A stretch of DNA of 64,000 nucleotides from IMGVR_UViG_3300032236_002285:62001-126000; one strand, 5' to 3'. Positions 2,612-36,293 are shown, counted from the first letter of the stretch. Notes: a model not told the origin generated them from the sequence alone. Translations and numbers: made by a program.

Positions 2612-3967
2612 ATGGCTGATAAAAAATCTACACGAGTTAAATTTTCTGAAGAATTACATGATTTACTAAGAATCCTTGAGGATGATGGTAGTTATGTTGC
2701 TTTTGAATTACTTTGGTTAAATGAACCAGATTCAAAATATCATAATGGATTAGATGTTGAAGATGTTGATATATCCAAAACAAGATCTTGCTTAGATGTT
2801 AATATTAGAGGTAGAGTTCATCCTATGAAAATAGAAAACTTTATTAAATATTTTTTCAAAAATTATTTCCAATCAGATGTTGTTTTAGATTTTATTGAAC
2901 AATATAACATATTAGCTGGTGGTGGCGGTGAGTTACAAGATACAAGAACTAAAATTATACCAGAACCTTTTAAATATAATCCTAAAGACGTTAGAAGTAC
3001 ATTTATTTCATTAGTTACTAAAACATATCCACACGGACATGAAGAAGAAGTTATGCAGTTTATGCCTAAATTGGATAAAGATTCTGTGGGTAACTATTAT
3101 AAAATTATTGGTGAGAATCCAACAACTATGTTTACATCTCACTTAGATACTGCTGATAGAAAACAAGGAATCACTAAACTTCTTTCAATGAAAGACGAGA
3201 ATGGTGATGAAATTATCTATACTGATGGTTCTACTATCTTAGGTTCGGATGATAAAGCCGGTGTTGCTGTTATGTTATATATGATGGCTCATAATATACC
3301 GGGTCTTTATTATTTCTTTATGGGTGAAGAAAGAGGTGGTATCGGTTCAGGTTTACTTTCTTCTGTGTATGATGAAACTCCTTATCTTAAAAATATTAAA
3401 AGGTGCGTTTCATTTGATAGAAGAGATGTTAAATCGGTTATTACTTCTCAATTAGGTAGAACTTGTTGTTCTGATACATTTGGTACTGCTTTATGTAAAG
3501 AATACAATGCTCATGGTCTTAAATTATCTTTAGATCCTACGGGTATATACACAGATTCTGCTTCATTTATTGACCAGATTCCTGAGTGTACTAACATTTC
3601 TGTTGGTTATTATAATGAGCATACTGGTAAAGAAAGACAAAACATTAACTATTTAGAGAGATTAGCTAAAGCAAGTGTTTTGGTTAATTGGAATTCTCTA
3701 CCAACTGCTAGAAAGATAGGAATTGATGAGGAAGTTATCAGAAAATATGGTAGATTCATTAATGAGCTAAAGGCTACTCCAATGGGAATTGATATCAAAG
3801 TTATGGCTGAAGAAGGTGGTGGTACTGTAATTGCTTGTGATATGGAAGAGGGTTATATTGATGCAACGTATGAGTCACTGACAATGTTACAATTCTTATT
3901 AAATAAACATAAAATCAATCAAACAGTATATTTTGATGGTGATTATATAAAAATAGATTTATCATAA
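2612..3967 (+). CDS. M20/M28-family Zn peptidase-like protein (paralog 1)
   Basis: FTSHLDT, LGSDDKAG, GEERGGIGS, SFDRR, TDS and HT metal-ligand motifs. Confidence 0.8.
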   Translation: MADKKSTRVKFSEELHDLLRILEDDGSYVAFELLWLNEPDSKYHNGLDVEDVDISKTRSCLDVNIRGRVHPMKIENFIKYFFKNYFQSDVVLDFIEQYNILAGGGGELQDTRTKIIPEPFKYNPKDVRSTFISLVTKTYPHGHEEEVMQFMPKLDKDSVGNYYKIIGENPTTMFTSHLDTADRKQGITKLLSMKDENGDEIIYTDGSTILGSDDKAGVAVMLYMMAHNIPGLYYFFMGEERGGIGSGLLSSVYDETPYLKNIKRCVSFDRRDVKSVITSQLGRTCCSDTFGTALCKEYNAHGLKLSLDPTGIYTDSASFIDQIPECTNISVGYYNEHTGKERQNINYLERLAKASVLVNWNSLPTARKIGIDEEVIRKYGRFINELKATPMGIDIKVMAEEGGGTVIACDMEEGYIDATYESLTMLQFLLNKHKINQTVYFDGDYIKIDLS

Positions 3968-5936: not shown

Positions 5937-6758
5937 ATGAGAAAATTAAAAGACCTATCTGATATTGAAAAATCAGAAATTTTAAATCAAAGAAAACTTG
6001 GAACTACAGAAAAAGAAATATCATCTAAATTTGATATTTCTTTAAGGCAATATTATAACTTATTGAAGCTAAATAACGTTGAAAGAAAAAACAAAGTAGT
6101 TAGGTATAATTTTGATGAAGATTATTTTGAATCTATAGACACTGAAGATAAAGCTTACTTTTTGGGATTTATTGTTGCTGATGGTTGTATTAGTGATAAG
6201 ACAAATACTATTAAGATAATACAGAAGGAAATTGATATATTATATGAATTTAAAAAGTATATTAATTCAGACGGTGGTATATTTACATCAAAAAATAGAA
6301 ATATTTCAAGCTTTAGTGTATCATCTGCTAAGACTAAAGATGATCTTGAAAAGTTGGGAATACATTCAAATAAAACAATGGTTGTTAAATATCCAAGTAT
6401 TCCTGATAATTTACAAAATCACTTCATGAGAGGTGTCTTTGATGGAGATGGTTGTATTACATTGAGAACAGATAAAAGAGACAATCAACAAAGAGGACAA
6501 GTAAATATATGTTCAGGTAGTTATGATTTTATAAAAGAATATTATGATAAATTAGTATTATTTGCTAATTTATCAGGTAGGAATAAAATAAGATGCCCTA
6601 AAGGAACATATCATGTGGTTGACTGGGGTGGTTTATCAGATGTTGAGAATATTTATAATTTTTTATATAAAGACTCAACTATATACCTCAAACGAAAAAA
6701 AGAAACTTTCGAAAAAGTAATTAGTATAACTAAAGATAAAAATAAATATAGAAAATAA
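5937..6758 (+). mobile_element. Free-standing double-motif LAGLIDADG homing endonuclease with N-terminal HTH
   Basis: YFLGFIVADGCI and HFMRGVFDGDGCI motifs; C-terminal YLKRK; own TTATATATA motif upstream. Confidence 0.9.
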
Positions 6759-13020: not shown

Positions 13021-13560
13021 ATGATCGGATTAGAACACAAAGATGCTTCTTTTATTTTACTTTCTTCCACAAGGCTTGAAGATATGATTTCAATTCTTTA
13101 TGCTAAAGAATATCAAATTATCCCTATAAAGGGTTATTATAAAGGTCAATACGAGGATTCTGTTATGGGTTATGGTCGTGTTGATAATGATACTCTAAGA
13201 AATGATGTTCTTTTCCTATTAAACCACTTTCATGAAGAGTGCGCTATCATTAAATATAATGGTGAAACTAACGCTAAAAAGATATTCAGAGATGGCTCTG
13301 AAAAACCAATGGGTATTGTGATGTATAATACAGATGCTGATAACATGTCTTATTTATATAATGGTACATCATTTTCTTTTGTTGAGTCAAAAAGATATTG
13401 GAAACCAACTAAGAAAGAAGATTTCAGAGTTGGTATGTTAGTTGAGTATTTTAATAATAATAAGTGGTATGAAAAGCTTGTTGAAAATCCTAGTGATGAA
13501 TATGAAAAGCTTTATAAGTTACTTATAAAGTATGATAAAGTTAGAGTAGCTTCTAGATAA
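13021..13560 (+). CDS. Hypothetical protein
   Basis: TAATATATA-cttt-ATG start. Confidence 0.7.
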   Translation: MIGLEHKDASFILLSSTRLEDMISILYAKEYQIIPIKGYYKGQYEDSVMGYGRVDNDTLRNDVLFLLNHFHEECAIIKYNGETNAKKIFRDGSEKPMGIVMYNTDADNMSYLYNGTSFSFVESKRYWKPTKKEDFRVGMLVEYFNNNKWYEKLVENPSDEYEKLYKLLIKYDKVRVASR

Positions 13561-14329
13561 TTTCAAACCAATTTATACACTTTTCAAAATTTGGTGTTTC
13601 TTTTAAGAAATATCTCATGTCATTTGGACAATTTATTACATTTAATCCATTATCAGTTTTCTGAACATTTCTCATCATAATAATCTTATTTGATTTAATA
13701 TAAGGAGAAGGTATAACATTCATACCGTTAATATTTCCAGTTACAACACCGTCATTACTAGAAACCATCATTACATAAGACATAAGAAGATATTTATAAG
13801 CATCTAAACCAACTATAATAGTATTAGCTAACCCCATTCTACTTGTAGAAGCTATTAAATTACTAATCATTGATATTCTTGTCATAATTCTTTTAGATTT
13901 AGACATTTCATTTTCATAATCAGTTAGATTTCCATCTTTTATATAACTAATATTTAGATTTTGTGGAATATTCATAGGATTTGATGTTAATAATTCTAAA
14001 GTATTCATAACATCTGTATAAATATCTGTTAAATCTAAATATGTTTTACCTTGTACATTAATAGAATTAACCTTAGGTGATATAGTTGACATATATCCTT
14101 CATTGTCTAATGAGTTTAAAAACGGTTCTCTATTCTTAAACTCTTCTACTTTACCATCTACAATAGCATCAATAGCAAGTTCTCTATTCTTTCTTTTTAA
14201 CTCTCTTTGATACTCTTCATTTGGAGTTTCTTCAAAATCAATATACATCATCAATGTTTGAGGTTGTGATGGTTTTGTAGATTCTACATAGTTACAGATT
14301 TTTTCTAAATCTTTAGATGAAATTATCAT
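13553..14329 (-). CDS. Degenerate major-capsid-derived protein
   Basis: KRIMTRISMISNLIASTSRMGLANTIIV vs capsid RKLITKIAHASNYIATEGRVGPAQYLIT; GNINGMNVIPSPY vs GSIGDISIYVDPY. Confidence 0.7.
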   Translation of the reverse strand: MIISSKDLEKICNYVESTKPSQPQTLMMYIDFEETPNEEYQRELKRKNRELAIDAIVDGKVEEFKNREPFLNSLDNEGYMSTISPKVNSINVQGKTYLDLTDIYTDVMNTLELLTSNPMNIPQNLNISYIKDGNLTDYENEMSKSKRIMTRISMISNLIASTSRMGLANTIIVGLDAYKYLLMSYVMMVSSNDGVVTGNINGMNVIPSPYIKSNKIIMMRNVQKTDNGLNVINCPNDMRYFLKETPNFEKCINWFEII

Positions 14330-22858: not shown

Positions 22859-24385
22859 ATGTTAATTGAAACACAATATTTAACAAATAGTAAGAAATTA
22901 GTAGTTAGTTACGTTGATAAAAGTGGTGATATAAAGCTTAAATATTATAATTGGGACAATCCAATGAAATATGTTGCTTGTGAAGACAGCGATCCACTTA
23001 GACACCCTGAGTTTAAATCTTGGGATGGTAAACACGTTAAGCAAGTAGAAGTAAATCAACCTGATAGATATGCTATCTATGAATTTTTAGATGGCTTGCC
23101 TGAATCAGAAAAAAATGAAATCTTTGAATTTAATCTTCCTAAGATTTACTTTATAGATATTGAAACTGAAATCGTTGATGGTTTCCCTGAAGCAGCTGAT
23201 GTTAAAGATGTTAATGGTAATGTAACTAAAGAAGGTGCTTCAACACAAGTTCTTTCTATCTCTATTGTTTATGATGATAAAATCATTCTTCTTGGTTTGA
23301 AAGAAATGCCAGAGGAAATGCAAGATAGAATTATCACTAATACTAATAAATACTTTGAAAAGTTTGGCACTGAGTATAAATTCAAATATATCAAATATGA
23401 TGATGAATTTGATATGTTGTATGCTTTCTTTTATAAGATGATTCCTAAGATGCCTATCTTAACTGGTTGGAACTTCTTAAAATATGACTGGTTATATTTA
23501 GTAAATCGTTCAAGAAAAATTTCAAAATGGGCTAATGGTAAAGAATATAAAATTGACCCAGCTGTTTCTTCTTTAACAAAAAGAATGAACAAGATTTGGT
23601 CAACTGAATTTGAAGTACCGGCACATCGAATGATTTTTGACTATATGCAGTTGTATGAAATCTGTGATACTTCTATTAAAGTAAAAGAATCATCATCATT
23701 AGACTTCGTTGCTAATAAACTGGTGGGTGTTGAAAAGATTAAGTATAATGGATCTTTACAGAAATTATATGAAGATGACTTTGAAACATTTATGTACTAT
23801 AACGCTGTCGATAGTGTACTTGTTCAAAAAATACATGATGCTCGTAACTATATCTCAATCATTTACGCGATTTCATCATTAGCTCAAATCAGAATTATTG
23901 ACGTTGTTTCTCAGATGAATAATGCGTTAGGTTCTTTGGCTATTACAGAAGGTGTTTTAAGAAATAGATTCCGTAAGATGGATAACATTGTTCTTTTCCG
24001 AGATGAGAAAGGAGATGCTGAATCTACAATTGCTGGTGGTTGGGTTAAGGATCCTGTAGTTGGTATGAATCAGTGGTGTGTGACCTATGACTTTGCGTCA
24101 CTTTATCCAACAACTCAAAGACAATTTTACATTGCACCAGAAACATTTGTTGGTCTTCAAGATGAAAAAGATAAATCTAAGTGTACAAATGGTAGACCAA
24201 TTGATTTAACTAAGCACGTTCTTTGTGTGAATGGTGTTGTATTTGAAAAGAGAAAATCGCCTACTTTGCTTATGCTCGAAGATGTTTATGCTGATAGAAA
24301 GAAAGCTAAGAAAGTGATGATGGATAAGAAAGAAGATTTGAAAAAAATAATGGATGAGATTAAACAATTAGAAGCAGAAATATAA
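22859..24385 (+). CDS. DNA polymerase family B, N-terminal subunit (exonuclease plus motif A); split gene
   Basis: FIDIETE, GWNFLKYD, YNAVDS exonuclease motifs; GGWV and YDFASLYP; ends in the fingers with no KxxxNSxYG or YxDTDS. Confidence 0.9.
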   Translation: MLIETQYLTNSKKLVVSYVDKSGDIKLKYYNWDNPMKYVACEDSDPLRHPEFKSWDGKHVKQVEVNQPDRYAIYEFLDGLPESEKNEIFEFNLPKIYFIDIETEIVDGFPEAADVKDVNGNVTKEGASTQVLSISIVYDDKIILLGLKEMPEEMQDRIITNTNKYFEKFGTEYKFKYIKYDDEFDMLYAFFYKMIPKMPILTGWNFLKYDWLYLVNRSRKISKWANGKEYKIDPAVSSLTKRMNKIWSTEFEVPAHRMIFDYMQLYEICDTSIKVKESSSLDFVANKLVGVEKIKYNGSLQKLYEDDFETFMYYNAVDSVLVQKIHDARNYISIIYAISSLAQIRIIDVVSQMNNALGSLAITEGVLRNRFRKMDNIVLFRDEKGDAESTIAGGWVKDPVVGMNQWCVTYDFASLYPTTQRQFYIAPETFVGLQDEKDKSKCTNGRPIDLTKHVLCVNGVVFEKRKSPTLLMLEDVYADRKKAKKVMMDKKEDLKKIMDEIKQLEAEI

Positions 24386-33594: not shown

Positions 33595-34239
33595 ATGAAT
33601 AAAATTGAAATAGATGGTAAGTTAGATAAAAGCTGGGTCATTGAATTGATGGCTAATGGTTATAACACTTATGATATAGCTACAAACTATGAACTACCAG
33701 AAGAAACTATTTTAGAATGTGCCGATCTTTTAGATAAAGAAGTTCTTTTACAAGGTTTGAACTTTTCAGAGAGTTTTATAGTTAAAGCTATAAAGTCTGA
33801 GTTCTTTTCTACTGAAGATATTGGTGAATTAAATATGACAACTTATTCTAATTTATCAAAAGAGTTTATATCTAAGTATGAAAATTATATTAATTGGAAT
33901 AGAATGATTCTTTATATTTCTACTCAATCAGATTCATTTGATAAATATACTGATATTATTGATAGTAAAGGCTTGTGGAGAGTTATAAGTGTTAATGACT
34001 TACCAATTGATTTTATTAGACAATGGAAAGATAAATTAGATTGGTCTTATTTATCAATGGTTAAATATTTTAGCGAAGATGAAAAGCTAGAATTTGCTGA
34101 TTATATAATGACACCTGTTCAGAAAGATTTGGGTAGTGAAAGCCTTATTAATACTGATGATTTGAAGTTTACTGATAAGATGTCTGATGAAGAATTGGAA
34201 AATTTAATTTACGAAATTTCTAAACATATTGATAAATAA
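33595..34239 (+). CDS. Hypothetical helical-repeat protein (INW/LDW repeats)
   Basis: YINWNRM and KLDWSYLS repeats. Confidence 0.7.
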   Translation: MNKIEIDGKLDKSWVIELMANGYNTYDIATNYELPEETILECADLLDKEVLLQGLNFSESFIVKAIKSEFFSTEDIGELNMTTYSNLSKEFISKYENYINWNRMILYISTQSDSFDKYTDIIDSKGLWRVISVNDLPIDFIRQWKDKLDWSYLSMVKYFSEDEKLEFADYIMTPVQKDLGSESLINTDDLKFTDKMSDEELENLIYEISKHIDK

Positions 34240-34389
34240 AACATATAACTTGTCTGTAAATAATCCACCTTTGAAAAAATTGAAATTTTAGAGGTTGATA
34301 TATACTAAACAAAATAAAAATTGAATTTTTTTTTGAAGATTTAAAACTTTTTGAATCTTCTTATATAAAAGAAAGACAATTAAATTATT

Positions 34390-34454
34390 CCAGTAGTGAA
34401 TTGAAGTGTTACTTCGCTAGGATTGAAAAAACACACTTTGATAACTTACTCTGG
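34390..34454 (+). ncRNA. Short Y-like RNA (Ro-binding stem only)
   Basis: ccag-UAGUGA-auugaagu..UACUUCG..acuuugau-AAC-UUACU-cugg; same architecture as 34470-34756; upstream of Ro60. Confidence 0.7.
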
Positions 34455-34469
34455 TCAACATAATTAAAA

Positions 34470-34756
34470 CGCAAGCATAGCGATAGTTTGAGATACTTCG
34501 ATACAAATATCAATTACTATGACAGCCAAAGTGCCGAGCCGACAGCAAAGCTACCACCGACAAGTGTCACACTTGTAGGTTCAATCTCTAACGAGTTTGG
34601 TAAAATGGTGAAAAGTCCGAAAAGCAACCACGTTAAAGGTCTAAGGAATTCAGAAACTTCCTTTAAATAAAGAACTGAGTGAGATAGTCACTATAACCAT
34701 CGGCAAAGTTTCGGGAGAATTCTTTGTAACGCTTAGGCTAAATTTACTTGTTTGCG
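34470..34756 (+). ncRNA. Long Y-like RNA (287 nt) with a large internal domain
   Basis: cgcaagca/uguuugcg terminal stem; UAGCGA/UUACU; 9-bp uaguuugag/cuuaggcua stem; UACUUCG; T-loop-like UUCAAUC hairpin; GC-enriched relative to flanks. Confidence 0.75.
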
Positions 34757-34764
34757 ATAATTAT

Positions 34765-34807
34765 AAAAGACCAGATTAACAGAAATGTTATCTGGTCTTT
34801 TTTTTTT
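34765..34807 (+). terminator. Terminator between the Y-like RNAs and Ro60
   Basis: aaaagaccagat(t)aaca-gaaa-tgttatctggtcttttttttt. Confidence 0.85.
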
Positions 34808-34841
34808 GTAAAAAAATTAATAAAAATTAAAAATATAGATT

Positions 34842-36293
34842 ATGTCAAAATTTAACACAACAATGCCAAAGGCAAAGACTTTAACTGAAAACTTAGCAGG
34901 TGGACAAGCTTATTCACAATCTGATGAATTGGCTTTGGTATCACTATTATTAACATCATTTGTTAATGACCAGTTTTATAGAAATGCTCAAACATCATTA
35001 GATGAGTTGAGAAGACTTTCTGCTAAAGTGAAAGATAAAGAGTTTGTTGCTAAGGCGGCTATCTTTGCTCGTGACCGTTTCGGTATGAGAAGTATTACTC
35101 ATGCTCTTGCTGGTGAATTAACTTCACAACTATCGGGTGCTGAGTGGGGTAAAAACTTCTACGACAAAGTAGTTGTTCGTGTTGATGATATGACTGAAAT
35201 CATGTCATACTACTTAGCTTATAAGACTTCTAAAGATAGTCCTAAGTTTCCAAACGCCTTGAAGAAAGGTTTTGCTAAGGCTTTTGATAAGTTTGATGGT
35301 TACCAATTAGCTAAGTACAAAGGTGACAACAAAGAAGTGAAACTTGTTGACTTGGTTAACATTGTTCACCCAGTTCCTACCTTTAGAAACAAAGCGGCTC
35401 TTGAGTCACTTGTTAAAGGTGAGTTGAAAAACACACAAACTTGGGAATCTATGTTGTCTCAAGCTGGTCAAGTAGCTGAGTCTGAAGAAGACTTGACTAA
35501 ATTGAAGTCTGATGCTTGGTCTGAATTGATTTCTACTAAGAAGATTGGTTACTTTGCGCTTCTTAGAAACTTGAGAAACATTATCACTCAAGCCCCAACA
35601 GCTGTTAAATCAGCTTGTGAAATGTTAGTTGATGAAAAGTTGATTAAGAACTCAAGAGTTCTTCCATTCCGTTTCTCAACTGCTTATGAAGAAATCAGTA
35701 AGATTGGTTCTTCTAAAGAAGTAAGAGATGTTCTTATGGCAATTAACCAAGCGCTTGATATTTCTGTTGCTAACGTACCAGTATTTGACGGTGAAACACT
35801 TGTTGTTATGGACGTCTCTGGTTCTATGAGTGGTAGACCATCTGAGATTGCGTCATTGTTTGGTGCTATCTTGGCTAAAGTTAATAACTGTGATGTTATG
35901 ACTTTCTCTACTGATGCTAAGTATATGTCTTATAATCCAATGGATTCTGTAATGACTATTAGAAATAGCTTCAGATTCTCTGGTGGTGGAACAAACTTCC
36001 GTTCTATCTTCCAGAAGGCTAACAAGAAGTATGACAGAGTTATTATCTTGTCAGACATGCAAGGTTGGGTGGGTTATACTAGTCCATCTGCGGACTTTTC
36101 TCAGTATAAAAAGAAATACAGTGCTAACCCATTTGTATATTCTTGGGATCTTGCTGGTTACTCTACACTTCAATTCCCAGAACAAAATGTCTTTGCTTTG
36201 GCTGGATTCAGTGATAAGGTTTTTCAAATAATGTCTCTTCTTGAAGAAGATAAACAAGCATTATTGAATGAAGTCAGAAGCATAAAAATATAA
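34842..36293 (+). CDS. rsr: Ro60/TROVE-domain ribonucleoprotein
   Basis: NLAGGQAY, LAKYK, HP, TWE, ALLRNLRNI, VLPFRF; vWA MIDAS DVSGSM, GGT, IILSD. Confidence 0.95.
   Translation: MSKFNTTMPKAKTLTENLAGGQAYSQSDELALVSLLLTSFVNDQFYRNAQTSLDELRRLSAKVKDKEFVAKAAIFARDRFGMRSITHALAGELTSQLSGAEWGKNFYDKVVVRVDDMTEIMSYYLAYKTSKDSPKFPNALKKGFAKAFDKFDGYQLAKYKGDNKEVKLVDLVNIVHPVPTFRNKAALESLVKGELKNTQTWESMLSQAGQVAESEEDLTKLKSDAWSELISTKKIGYFALLRNLRNIITQAPTAVKSACEMLVDEKLIKNSRVLPFRFSTAYEEISKIGSSKEVRDVLMAINQALDISVANVPVFDGETLVVMDVSGSMSGRPSEIASLFGAILAKVNNCDVMTFSTDAKYMSYNPMDSVMTIRNSFRFSGGGTNFRSIFQKANKKYDRVIILSDMQGWVGYTSPSADFSQYKKKYSANPFVYSWDLAGYSTLQFPEQNVFALAGFSDKVFQIMSLLEEDKQALLNEVRSIKI

What the first reader, a model, noticed from the sequence alone, without database searches (positions are those of the whole stretch)
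34502..34728. Unexplained ~215-nt structured module inside the long Y-like RNA
Seen: inside the Y skeleton, uacaaa/uuugua closes a GC-enriched domain. It holds a long-range ugccga/ucggca helix, hairpins acaagug-uca-cacuugu and aaggaa..uuccuu, and a T-arm-like hairpin uagg-UUCAAUC-ucua whose extension (cuug/cgag) competes with the acaagug hairpin. Known: YrlA RNAs carry a tRNA-like module of well under 100 nt. Inference: this domain is much larger and shows no full tRNA mimic, so it may be an undescribed effector module, switch or ribozyme-like fold delivered by Ro60.
Basis: partly seen in the sequence, partly recalled or inferred. Interest (0 to 1): 0.8.

Follow-up and report, generated by a model that had tools for sequence, protein, structure and literature searches.

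The report
Giant pseudoknotted Y-like RNA beside phage Ro60
A huge bacteriophage encodes, just upstream of its Ro60 gene, a roughly 340-base Y-type RNA in which the usual small tRNA-like part is replaced by a conserved 215-base domain held together by three pseudoknots, a form of Y RNA I found described nowhere.

Summary

- **Location:** window 34460-34807 is a non-coding RNA directly upstream of a Ro60 (TROVE + vWA) gene in a T4-like huge phage.
- **Family:** I collected 81 distinct homologues. In 106 of 106 loci with enough flank, Ro60 follows on the same strand.
- **Y-type stem:** the basal stem carries the same signature (UAGYGA-N9-RWUACUUCG) as a small neighbouring hairpin (34390-34454) and as small RNAs, one of them scoring as tRNA, beside more distant phage Ro60 genes.
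- **The insert:** covariation supports hairpins P_a, P_b (a hypervariable arm), P_d, P_e and P2', plus three pseudoknot pairings (PK1-PK3). Helices are 84-99% canonical, against about 10-70% in most slid controls. Pseudoknot PK3 shows four complementary triplet types across 64 of 64 sequences.
uacaaa/uuugua and ugccga/ucggca are not conserved and clash with supported pairs. The T-arm-like hairpin exists only in this genome, inside the variable arm.
- **Databases:** no Rfam family and no tRNA or tmRNA matches.
- **Expression:** metatranscriptomes cover the RNA far more deeply than Ro60 mRNA. Two of them carry a head-to-tail joint (3' U-tract to about 34461-34465), which suggests a circular form. 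This is unproven.
- **Best reading:** a new Y RNA variant with a novel effector domain.

The parts
34363..34372 (+). Candidate promoter TATATAAAAG for the module 1 + module 2 transcript
   Evidence: Conserved upstream block in alignment A1. The likeness to the T4 late promoter TATAAATA is from my own knowledge and is an inference. The window has a Gp23-type capsid gene.
34390..34454 (+). Module 1: small Y-like hairpin (CCAGUAGUGA...GUUACUUCG...ACUCUGG), a paralogue of the module 2 stem
   Evidence: Conserved in all homologues. It carries the same 5' signature as module 2 and as the small RNAs next to distant Ro60 genes.
34460..34466 (+). S0 5' strand (AUAAUUA), pairs with 34758-34764
   Evidence: Minimum-free-energy fold. 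It is AU-rich and its covariation was not tested rigorously.
34470..34480 (+). S1 5' strand (CGCAAGCA-U-AG), pairs with 34747-34756; U34478 is bulged
   Evidence: 99% canonical with 6 compensatory pairs; slid controls 31-57%.
34484..34492 (+). S2 5' strand (UAGUUUGAG), pairs with 34732-34740
   Evidence: 97% canonical with 4 compensatory pairs.
34493..34500 (+). AUACUUCG motif, the presumed Ro60 contact (a CGA(A)-type motif)
   Evidence: AGAUACUUCG is invariant in the family. The core UACUUCG is also in module 1 of this window, and GUUACUUC is in each L023-L025 and L032 unit, three of the five distinct ones followed by G. The CGAA motif is required for binding by the closest solved Ro60 (PMC12135203).
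34500..34511 (+). H1, a small weak hairpin GAUA-CAAA-UAUC
   Evidence: Present in some lineages only; weak.
34533..34551 (+). P_a / P_a' hairpin (GC...GC-CGACA-GC...GC); its loop GAC (34541-34543) forms PK3
   Evidence: P_a 84% canonical with covariation CG/UA/AU. PK3.
34553..34609 (+). P_b arm: conserved base ACC/GGU closing a hypervariable hairpin.
   Evidence: Base 96% canonical with CG<->UA compensation. Arm sequence and length differ between close relatives. Energies.
34610..34617 (+). A-rich linker GAAAA plus GUC (34615-34617), the PK3 partner of the P_a' loop
   Evidence: 64/64 sequences complementary. Triplet types: GAC/GUC 40, AAC/GUU 10, GUC/GAC 10, CUC/GAG 4. GGC/GCC was read by eye in L043 and L055, outside the 64-sequence set. 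My script scored 55/64; the other nine show GUC in the printed loop. Shuffled partners: mean 27.5, maximum 38.
34618..34632 (+). P_c: variable small hairpin, weak in this genome (CG...CG)
   Evidence: Homologues show CGAG/CUCG, CGAG/CUUG, CAGG/CCUG, CGG/CCG.
34643..34663 (+). P_d hairpin AAGGAA-UUCAGAAAC-UUCCUU; optional, absent in one subgroup
   Evidence: 95-96% paired. Absent in L007, L008, L123 and similar sequences.
34675..34677 (+). PK2 partner (CUG) of the P_d loop nucleotides 34651-34653 (CAG)
   Evidence: All 3 pairs show compensatory changes; 96-97% paired.
34678..34692 (+). P_e hairpin AGUGA-GAUAG-UCACU
   Evidence: 85-87% paired with compensatory changes.
34697..34701 (+). PK1 partner (CCAUC) of the P_e loop 34683-34687 (GAUAG)
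   Evidence: First pair GC 46 / UA 14 / AU 1. Fourth pair alternates G.U (32), G-C (14) and A.C (8). GAAA/UUUC in L018. 90% paired.
34703..34727 (+). P2' hairpin GCAAAG/CUUUGU with apical UUC-GGGA-GAA (a GNRA loop)
   Evidence: Found de novo by RNAalifold. 94% paired with CG<->UA and AU<->GC compensation.
34732..34764 (+). 3' strands of S2, S1 and S0
34765..34807 (+). Intrinsic terminator (AAAAGACCAGAU...AUCUGGUCUUUU plus U-tract). Its stem sequence is unusually conserved.
   Evidence: Fold; terminator-like Rfam sub-threshold hits; near-invariant columns in A1. RNA joints place the 3' end at 34802/34803.
34842..36293 (+). Ro60 orthologue (TROVE + Ro60-type vWA)
   Evidence: Pfam TROVE E = 6.7e-18. 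vWA_Ro60 E = 5.3e-06, but at 26.9 bits it falls just under Pfam's 27.7-bit cut-off. Closest solved structure is Thermus phage phiLo Ro60, E = 1.2e-22.

Best explanation
Window 34460-34807 encodes a giant Y-type RNA (module 2, about 340 nt). It is made together with a small Y-like hairpin (module 1) from a promoter upstream of the phage's Ro60 gene.

Its terminal stem (S0-S2) and the adjoining AUACUUCG motif are the Ro60 docking site. This is inferred from the signature it shares with the other Ro60-linked RNAs and from the role of the CGAA motif in the closest characterised phage Ro60.

In bacterial YrlA a tRNA-like module of under 100 nt sits at this position. This RNA instead carries a 215-nt domain that folds into a compact body. 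The body consists of hairpins P_a, P_b (a free, hypervariable arm), P_c, P_d, P_e and P2' (capped by a GNRA loop), locked by three loop-to-strand pseudoknots (PK1-PK3) and joined by A-rich linkers. The fold is shown by covariation.

The domain most likely acts as the effector or adaptor part of the Y RNA. It would give a nuclease-resistant surface that tethers phage Ro60 to a partner. By analogy with the Ro60-Y RNA-PNPase complex, that partner would be a host 3'-5' exoribonuclease such as PNPase. The domain may also gate the Ro60 cavity. This step is inferred and was not tested.

The RNA's ends (about 34461-34465 and 34802/34803) lie side by side as a nick between the stacked S0 helix and the terminator hairpin. 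They may be ligated into a circle.
For: **Linkage.** Ro60 identity. In 106 of 106 loci, Ro60 lies directly downstream on the same strand.

**Family size.** 81 distinct homologues from viral and metagenome contigs.

**Shared stem signature.** It occurs in module 1, in module 2, and in the RNAs beside the distant Ro60 genes of L023-L025. One of these scores as tRNA in Rfam, and two carry a GGUUCGAAUCC T-arm.

**CGAA-dependent binding.** The nearest solved Ro60 binds upstream Yrl RNAs in a CGAA-dependent way and forms complexes with host PNPase (PMC12135203).

**Covariation for the fold.**. With the dedicated tool: 92.4% of cells paired against 37-55% when slid, 12 pairs changed on both sides against 3-5, and 0 of 500 shuffles as good.

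**Expression.** Metatranscriptome depth is 25-150 over the RNA, 4-12 over most of the Ro60 coding sequence, and near 0 over the upstream gene.

**Not coding.** Arm lengths differ by numbers that are not multiples of three.
Against: - No binding data exist for this RNA or this Ro60.
- The motif is UUCGA(U/A), not the published GNCGAAN0-1G.
- The partner of the large domain is unknown. No PNPase, RtcB or RNA ligase gene was found among the 34 of the window's 69 ORFs that I scanned with Pfam. The rest of the 476-kb genome was not examined.
- The covariation tests do not use a phylogeny-aware null model such as R-scape.
- Metatranscriptome depths come from assembled contigs of mixed relatives and are only rough.
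Confidence: 0.6

Rival explanations
1. The element is a cis-acting leader (a riboswitch or attenuator) of the Ro60 mRNA. The pseudoknotted domain would sense a ligand or protein and control the terminator at 34765-34807, so it would not act in trans as a Y RNA.
For: The RNA ends in an intrinsic terminator only about 35 nt before the Ro60 start codon. Ro60 is always downstream. Pseudoknotted domains with conserved unpaired A-rich linkers are typical of aptamers. The terminator's 5' arm GACCAGA is complementary to the 3' end of module 1 (UCUGGUC), which offers a possible alternative pairing (read from the sequence).
Against: The domain is enclosed by its own long stem and does not overlap the terminator, so there is no evident anti-terminator competing with the aptamer. 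The stem signature is shared with free-standing small RNAs in other Ro60 phages. The RNA accumulates well above the downstream mRNA. No covariation supports the alternative pairing.
Confidence: 0.12
2. The RNA is an autonomous structured RNA, such as a ribozyme or a mimic of another cellular RNA. Its work would not involve Ro60 binding, and the synteny would reflect co-regulation only.
For: The complexity is comparable with small ribozymes: three pseudoknots, a GNRA loop, and high sequence conservation in the joining strands. The head-to-tail RNA joint could in principle follow self-processing.
Against: Association with Ro60 is perfect in 106 loci. The family pattern found nothing in 185,579 species' genomes. 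The stem is a paralogue of the adjacent small Y-like hairpin. The 3' end of the joint falls in the terminator U-tract, as expected for termination rather than cleavage. There is no match to any Rfam ribozyme.
Confidence: 0.1
3. The head-to-tail joint is a library artefact: reverse transcriptase switches template from the 5' end to the adjacent 3' end. The RNA would be linear only.
For: Only 2 of 4 runs show the joint, and both list RT-PCR as their library selection. Linear ends create no competing branch in a de Bruijn graph, so rare chimeric reads could close a cycle. Two runs show contigs ending in adaptor at 34476, 34736 and 34759. Depth over the terminator hairpin is 0-74% of the body, which suggests a 3'-trimmed linear form.
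Against: The same joint (34802->34461 and 34803->34465) appears in two different studies and in two different strains. One contig is a closed 315-nt cycle at depth 58.6 with an exact 30-nt end overlap. No head-to-tail DNA copy exists in 120 loci or in the viral contig collection. In the predicted fold the two ends abut as a nick in a stacked helix, which is a natural ligase substrate.
Confidence: 0.5

Closest known systems
YrlA (bacterial and mycobacteriophage Y RNAs; Chen et al. 2014, PMC4201824)
   Same: Encoded within a few hundred bases of Ro60 on the same strand. The 5' and 3' ends form a long stem. There is a short CGA(A)-containing motif on the 5' strand, and a separate internal 'effector' module.
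   Different: YrlA is 80-130 nt, and its module is a tRNA mimic with nearly invariant T and D arms. Here the RNA is about 340 nt. The module is 215 nt with three pseudoknots and no conserved T or D arm. Neither ARAGORN nor Rfam finds a tRNA-like hit. The motif is UUCGA(U/A), not GNCGAAN0-1G.
Yrl1/Yrl2 of Thermus phage phiLo (PMC12135203)
   Same: They are phage-encoded and lie upstream of the Ro60 gene. That Ro60 is the closest solved relative of the one here (E = 1.2e-22). There are two RNAs per locus, each a stem-bulge-stem with a CGAA motif, and they bind host PNPase in vitro.
   Different: The phiLo RNAs are small simple hairpins: in Yrl2 the resolved stem spans residues G4 to G59. They have no large pseudoknotted domain.
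Deinococcus radiodurans Yrn1 in the Ro60-Y RNA-PNPase (RYPER) complex
   Same: It gives a functional model: the stem binds Ro60 and the other module tethers an exoribonuclease.
   Different: The Yrn1 effector part is a large internal loop with some tRNA-like features, not a pseudoknotted fold.
tmRNA
   Same: A terminal stem formed by the two ends encloses a string of H-type pseudoknots. Overall size is similar.
   Different: ARAGORN, which also searches for tmRNA, reports none in the window. No conserved T-arm was seen, and the one internal ORF is not conserved. The resemblance is recalled from memory and is a lead only.
Large ornate phage- or lake-associated RNAs (GOLLD, ROOL; PMC12286853)
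   Same: They are elaborate structured RNAs of unknown biochemical role carried by phages in freshwater metagenomes.
   Different: No Rfam family reached its threshold. GOLLD and ROOL are much larger and are not linked to Ro60 (own knowledge).

Membership tests
Y RNA / YrlA-type Ro60-associated RNA | Encoded near the Ro60 gene (within 4 kb) on the same strand | tested here: met
   The RNA ends about 35 nt before the Ro60 ATG. The arrangement is the same in 106 of 106 loci.
Y RNA / YrlA-type Ro60-associated RNA | 5' and 3' ends form a long stem that carries the Ro60 binding site | tested here: met
   S1 and S2 are 97-99% canonical with 10 compensatory pairs. Binding itself was not tested.
Y RNA / YrlA-type Ro60-associated RNA | GNCGAAN0-1G (CGAA) motif near the 5' end | tested here: inconclusive
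   An invariant AUACUUCG is followed by A or U. 'CGA' is always present, CGAA only in some members, and the leading G is replaced by U.
Y RNA / YrlA-type Ro60-associated RNA | Physical binding to Ro60 | not testable with these tools
   Needs EMSA or co-immunoprecipitation.
YrlA subfamily (tRNA mimics) | Nearly invariant T and D stem-loops forming a tRNA-like domain | tested here: not met
   ARAGORN finds 0 tRNAs. Rfam gives no tRNA or Y family hit even at E <= 10. The only T-loop-like hairpin (34576-34590) is absent from all homologues.
YrlA subfamily (tRNA mimics) | Length 80-130 nt | tested here: not met
   About 340 nt between the RNA-defined ends 34461/34465 and 34802/34803. The inner module is 180-260 nt across the family.
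Any Rfam 15 family | Score at or above the family's gathering threshold | tested here: not met
   0 matches in the whole window. Only terminator-like sub-threshold noise appears at E <= 10.
Riboswitch / transcription attenuator | Aptamer pairing mutually exclusive with the terminator (an expression platform) | tested here: not met
   The domain is closed by its own S0-S2 stem and shares no nucleotides with the terminator hairpin. The alternative pairing of the module 1 3' end with the terminator 5' arm has no covariation.
Circular RNA | Back-joined 3'-5' junction present in RNA but not in DNA | tested here: inconclusive
   The joint is seen in 2 of 4 metatranscriptomes, once as a closed 315-nt cycle. 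It is absent from 120 DNA loci and from the viral contig collection. An artefact of reverse transcription is not excluded.

The most novel reading that the evidence does not exclude
The giant Y-like RNA is processed away from module 1 and its ends are sealed in vivo, giving a circular Ro60-bound RNA. The triple-pseudoknot domain would then be a new docking or sensing module that redirects or blocks host exoribonucleases during infection by a huge phage. I know of no report of a circular Y RNA, nor of a non-tRNA structured effector module in one.
Probability: 0.3. Interest if true: 0.9.

Novelty: new variant of a known kind. Interest (0 to 1): 0.78.

Why it matters
Y RNAs are thought to be small (80-130 nt), with either a loop or a tRNA-like module as the effector part. 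A family of more than 80 phage Y-type RNAs with a conserved 215-nt triple-pseudoknot domain would widen what Ro60 ribonucleoproteins can be built from.

The family also gives a tractable, covariation-defined RNA fold for structural work. It makes two questions directly testable: what a phage Ro60 particle docks to during infection, and whether its RNA is circularised.

Tried and rejected
- **Known RNA families.** Rfam gave nothing at gathering thresholds over the whole window, and nothing relevant in E-value mode over 34200-34900. ARAGORN found no tRNA or tmRNA.
- **Whole-module RNAalifold.** On the full alignment it found only the basal stem, because the variable arms are misaligned. MAFFT Q-INS-i was not installed.
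- **Raw mutual-information ranking.** It is heavily confounded by subgroup structure, so I used it only to seed helices.
- **P1 (UACUU/AAGUG).** This candidate helix, and a UCG/UGA pairing with the conserved CUAUGA, are complementary in many members. Neither covaries, and both are absent in the distant subgroups, so I left them out.
- **P_a outer pairs GU/AC.** Rejected because they compete with P_b, which does covary.
- **P_c0 (GUCC/GGUC).** Rejected because it overlaps PK3.
- **11-nt tetraloop receptor.** A UAUGG/CUAAG receptor reading was considered. UAUGG is better explained by the covariation in PK1.
- **Search of isolate and MAG genomes.** The family pattern gave 0 hits, so no host clue came from it.
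- **Neighbouring genes.** Pfam scans of 30 neighbouring ORFs found no RNA ligase, RtcB or PNPase.
- **Coding potential.** The 60-aa TTG ORF at 34488-34670 was dismissed, because insertions and deletions in homologues are not multiples of three.

Full report
**Context.** The finding lies in the 600-bp gap between an unannotated ORF (33595-34239) and an ORF at 34842-36293.
- That ORF is a Ro60 orthologue. Pfam TROVE scores 6.7e-18. The Ro60-type vWA domain matches at 5.3e-06, just under Pfam's cut-off.
- Its closest solved relative is the Ro60 of Thermus phage phiLo (E = 1.2e-22, aligned over residues 12-476).
- The window is part of a 476-kb viral contig. It carries a Gp23-type capsid gene, a class I ribonucleotide reductase, a DnaB-like helicase and a thymidylate synthase.
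- Its nearest GenBank relative is a 635-kb 'uncultured phage'.
- A strong intrinsic terminator (34765-34807) ends the non-coding stretch about 35 nt before the Ro60 start.

**Known families.** Rfam 15 gives no match at gathering thresholds anywhere in the window. In E-value mode it returns only terminator-like noise. ARAGORN finds no tRNA or tmRNA.

**Is the single-sequence observation more than chance?** No.
- All the quoted strings are there.
- However, 6-bp complements are common in shuffles of the region: 12 observed against 6.4 +/- 3.4, and 35 of 500 shuffles do as well.
- The region's folding energy is ordinary (z = -0.35).
- Only the whole RNA, including the long terminal stem and the terminator, is unusually stable (z = -3.74).

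**Homologues.**
- A protein-based scan found 32 viral loci with Ro60 relatives.
- A pattern from the invariant 5' strand found further viral copies.
- A two-module pattern found 64 metagenome loci, largely from aquatic samples, and nothing in 185,579 species' genomes.
- An nhmmer search gave 120 loci with exactly one copy each and 81 distinct sequences.
- Wherever at least 200 nt of flank is present, a Ro60 gene follows on the same strand (106 of 106).

**It is a Y-type RNA.** The transcript has two modules.
- Module 1 (34390-34454) is a 65-nt hairpin.
- Module 2 (34460-34764) has a long terminal stem.
- Their 5' strands are paralogous: CCAGUAGUGAAUUGAAGUGUUACUUCG against AGCAUAGCGAUAGUUUGAGAUACUUCG. 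Their 3' strands are paralogous too (AC.CUU.G..UAA..UUACU).
- The same signature, GUAG(U/C)GA-N8-10-GUUACUUC, heads four tandem small RNAs upstream of the more distant Ro60 of L023-L025, with a fifth, slightly divergent unit among them. It also heads one RNA in L032.
- Two of the L023 units carry a GGUUCGAAUCC T-arm, and one of them scores as tRNA in Rfam.
- So the stem signature marks Ro60-linked RNAs in this phage clade, some of which are tRNA mimics of the published kind.
- The literature defines YrlA by a GNCGAAN0-1G motif plus T and D arms, at 80-130 nt (PMC4201824).
- The phiLo Ro60 binds two small upstream RNAs through a CGAA motif and forms complexes with host PNPase (PMC12135203).
- Here the motif is UUCGA(U/A).

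**The fold of the 215-nt insert.** I aligned 64 distinct module 2 sequences and tested pairings with slid-partner controls.

| Element | Pairing | Canonical | Compensatory pairs |
|---|---|---|---|
| S1 | 34470-80 / 34747-56 | 99% | 6 |
| S2 | 34484-92 / 34732-40 | 97% | 4 |
| P_a | 34533-34 / 34550-51 | 84% | 1 |
| P_b base | 34553-55 / 34607-09 | 96% | 2 |
| P_d | 34643-48 / 34658-63 | 95% | 1 |
| P_e | 34678-82 / 34688-92 | 85% | 5 |
| P2' | 34703-08 / 34722-27 | 94% | 3 |

P2' has an apical UUC-GGGA-GAA. This GNRA loop is GACA in L046. Slid controls give about 10-70% for most helices; for P_d, PK1, P2' and above all the 3-bp apical stem of P2', a few slid registers reach 71-93%.

Three loop-to-strand pairings are also supported.
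- **PK1** joins the P_e loop (34683-87) to the strand just 5' of P2' (34697-701). Its first pair is G-C (46), U-A (14) or A-U (1). Its fourth pair alternates G.U (32), G-C (14) and A.C (8). A distant subgroup has GAAA/UUUC instead of GAUG/CAUC.
- **PK2** joins the P_d loop (34651-53) to 34675-77, and all three pairs show compensatory changes.
- **PK3** joins the P_a' loop (34541-43) to the GUC after the GAAAA linker (34615-17).

Details of PK3:
- Its triplet types are GAC/GUC (40), AAC/GUU (10), GUC/GAC (10) and CUC/GAG (4). GGC/GCC occurs in L043 and L055, which lie outside the 64-sequence set and were read by eye.
- All 64 sequences are complementary, against a mean of 27.5 (maximum 38) when partners are shuffled. 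My script scored 55 of 64; the other nine were cut off by a trimming step, and the printed rows show GUC in the loop.
- The AAC/GUU change recurs in several separate subgroups.

On a 27-sequence alignment of the 3' half:
- The dedicated tool gave 92.4% paired cells against 37-55% slid.
- It found 12 pairs changed on both sides against 3-5 in the slid controls, and 0 of 500 shuffles were as good.
- RNAalifold found P2' de novo.

P_d and PK2 are missing together in one subgroup. P_c is a short variable hairpin that is weak in this genome.

- uacaaa/uuugua is 51% canonical. Its 3' strand is the 3' strand of P2'.
- ugccga/ucggca is 75% canonical without clean compensation. It uses nucleotides of P_a, PK1 and P2'.
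- The acaagug hairpin and the T-arm-like hairpin both sit in the P_b arm. The sequence and length of this arm change even between 86%-identical relatives.
- The T-loop-like sequence GG-UUCAAUC-UC occurs in this genome only. The conformer that contains it is about 6 kcal/mol less stable than the competing one.
- aaggaa/uuccuu is P_d.

**Expression and ends.** Contigs from four metatranscriptomes were laid on 33900-35400.
- Depth is 25-150 over 34424-34803, 4-12 over most of the Ro60 coding sequence, and near 0 over the upstream gene. These are rough figures from mixed relatives.
- One run has a 334-nt contig running from module 1 into module 2, so a joint precursor exists.
- Two runs from different studies show a head-to-tail joint. 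One is 34802->34461. The other is 34803-A-34465.
- The second joint lies in a 345-nt contig whose first and last 30 nt are identical. With k = 31, that is a closed 315-nt cycle, at depth 58.6.
- Its variable arm length (71 nt) fits the L118/L127 type, whose DNA is collinear.
- No head-to-tail DNA copy exists in 120 loci or in the viral contig collection.
- In the predicted fold, S0 ends at 34764 and the A/U-extended terminator hairpin starts at 34765. The 3' end (34802/34803) and the 5' end (34461-34465) therefore face each other as a nick in a stacked helix.
- This fits ligation into a circle, but template switching by reverse transcriptase is not excluded.
- Two runs show contigs ending in adaptor at 34476, 34736 and 34759, and depth over the terminator hairpin is lower than over the body. 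A 3'-trimmed linear form may therefore also exist.

**Interpretation.**
- *Shown:* a conserved, expressed RNA that is strictly linked to Ro60. It has a Y-type stem and a large multi-pseudoknot domain with one free variable arm.
- *Inferred:* the stem and motif bind Ro60. The domain is the effector or adaptor part that replaces the tRNA-like module, with a host exoribonuclease as the most likely partner by analogy with the D. radiodurans and phiLo complexes.
- *Open:* the partner, any ligand, and circularity.
- *Rivals:* a cis-acting leader or an autonomous ribozyme is less likely. The domain does not overlap the terminator. The stem is shared with free-standing small RNAs. The family was never found apart from Ro60.

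**Novelty.** Full-text searches for Ro60, Y RNA, YrlA, phage, jumbo or huge phage, pseudoknot and circular RNA found the YrlA papers, the phiLo study and a jumbo-phage survey. That survey mentions TROVE proteins 'with a tRNA-like partner'. Nothing describes this RNA. I rate it a new variant of a known kind.

Noticed in passing
window 34390-34454: A small Y-like hairpin (module 1) lies directly upstream of the giant RNA. It has the same UAGUGA...GUUACUUCG signature and is conserved in all homologues, so it is probably a second Ro60-binding RNA, analogous to YrlB or Yrl2.
   Followed up: partly
window 34461-34465 joined to 34802-34803 (RNA only): A head-to-tail joint appears in two metatranscriptomes, one of them as a closed 315-nt cycle. 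No such DNA arrangement exists. This points to a possible circular RNA or to a reverse-transcription artefact.
   Followed up: partly
window 34769-34797 and 34449-34456: The terminator stem sequence (GACCAGAU/AUCUGGUC) is nearly invariant across the family, which is unusual for a terminator. Its 5' arm is complementary to the invariant 3' end of module 1 (CUCUGGUC). The reason is unexplained. It might be an alternative pairing, a protein site, or part of the ligation junction helix.
   Followed up: no
window 34363-34372: A conserved TATATAAAAG lies upstream of module 1 and resembles the T4 late promoter consensus TATAAATA. The RNA may therefore be a late transcript.
   Followed up: no
L023 2416-2960 (also L024, L025): Five tandem small Y-like RNAs lie upstream of a distant phage Ro60 (57% identity). 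Two have a canonical GGUUCGAAUCC T-arm, and one of these scores as tRNA in Rfam (33.7 bits).
   Followed up: partly
L020 about 2893-3000: A GC-rich insertion of about 90 nt lies between the terminator and the Ro60 start codon. It is absent from all other homologues and could be a small mobile element or another RNA.
   Followed up: no
L001 about 3200-3240; L114; L147: An extra hairpin (UUGGUACUUUCGGGUUCCACCAA) is inserted in the joining strand between the CUAUGA box and P_a.
   Followed up: no
L082 7563-7869 (-): A group I intron (Rfam 68.7 bits) lies a few kb from the Ro60 locus of a related phage.
   Followed up: no
window 5937-6755; 115-1806 and 13556-14329(-); 22859-24382: There is a LAGLIDADG-type ORF and two Gp23-like capsid ORFs. 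A family B DNA polymerase ORF is only 508 aa long and looks split or truncated.
   Followed up: no
window 34476, 34736 and 34759 (metatranscriptome contig ends): Contigs in two runs end in sequencing adaptor at these positions. Depth over the terminator hairpin is 0-74% of the body. A 3'-trimmed linear form ending in the stem may coexist with the full-length or joined form.
   Followed up: no
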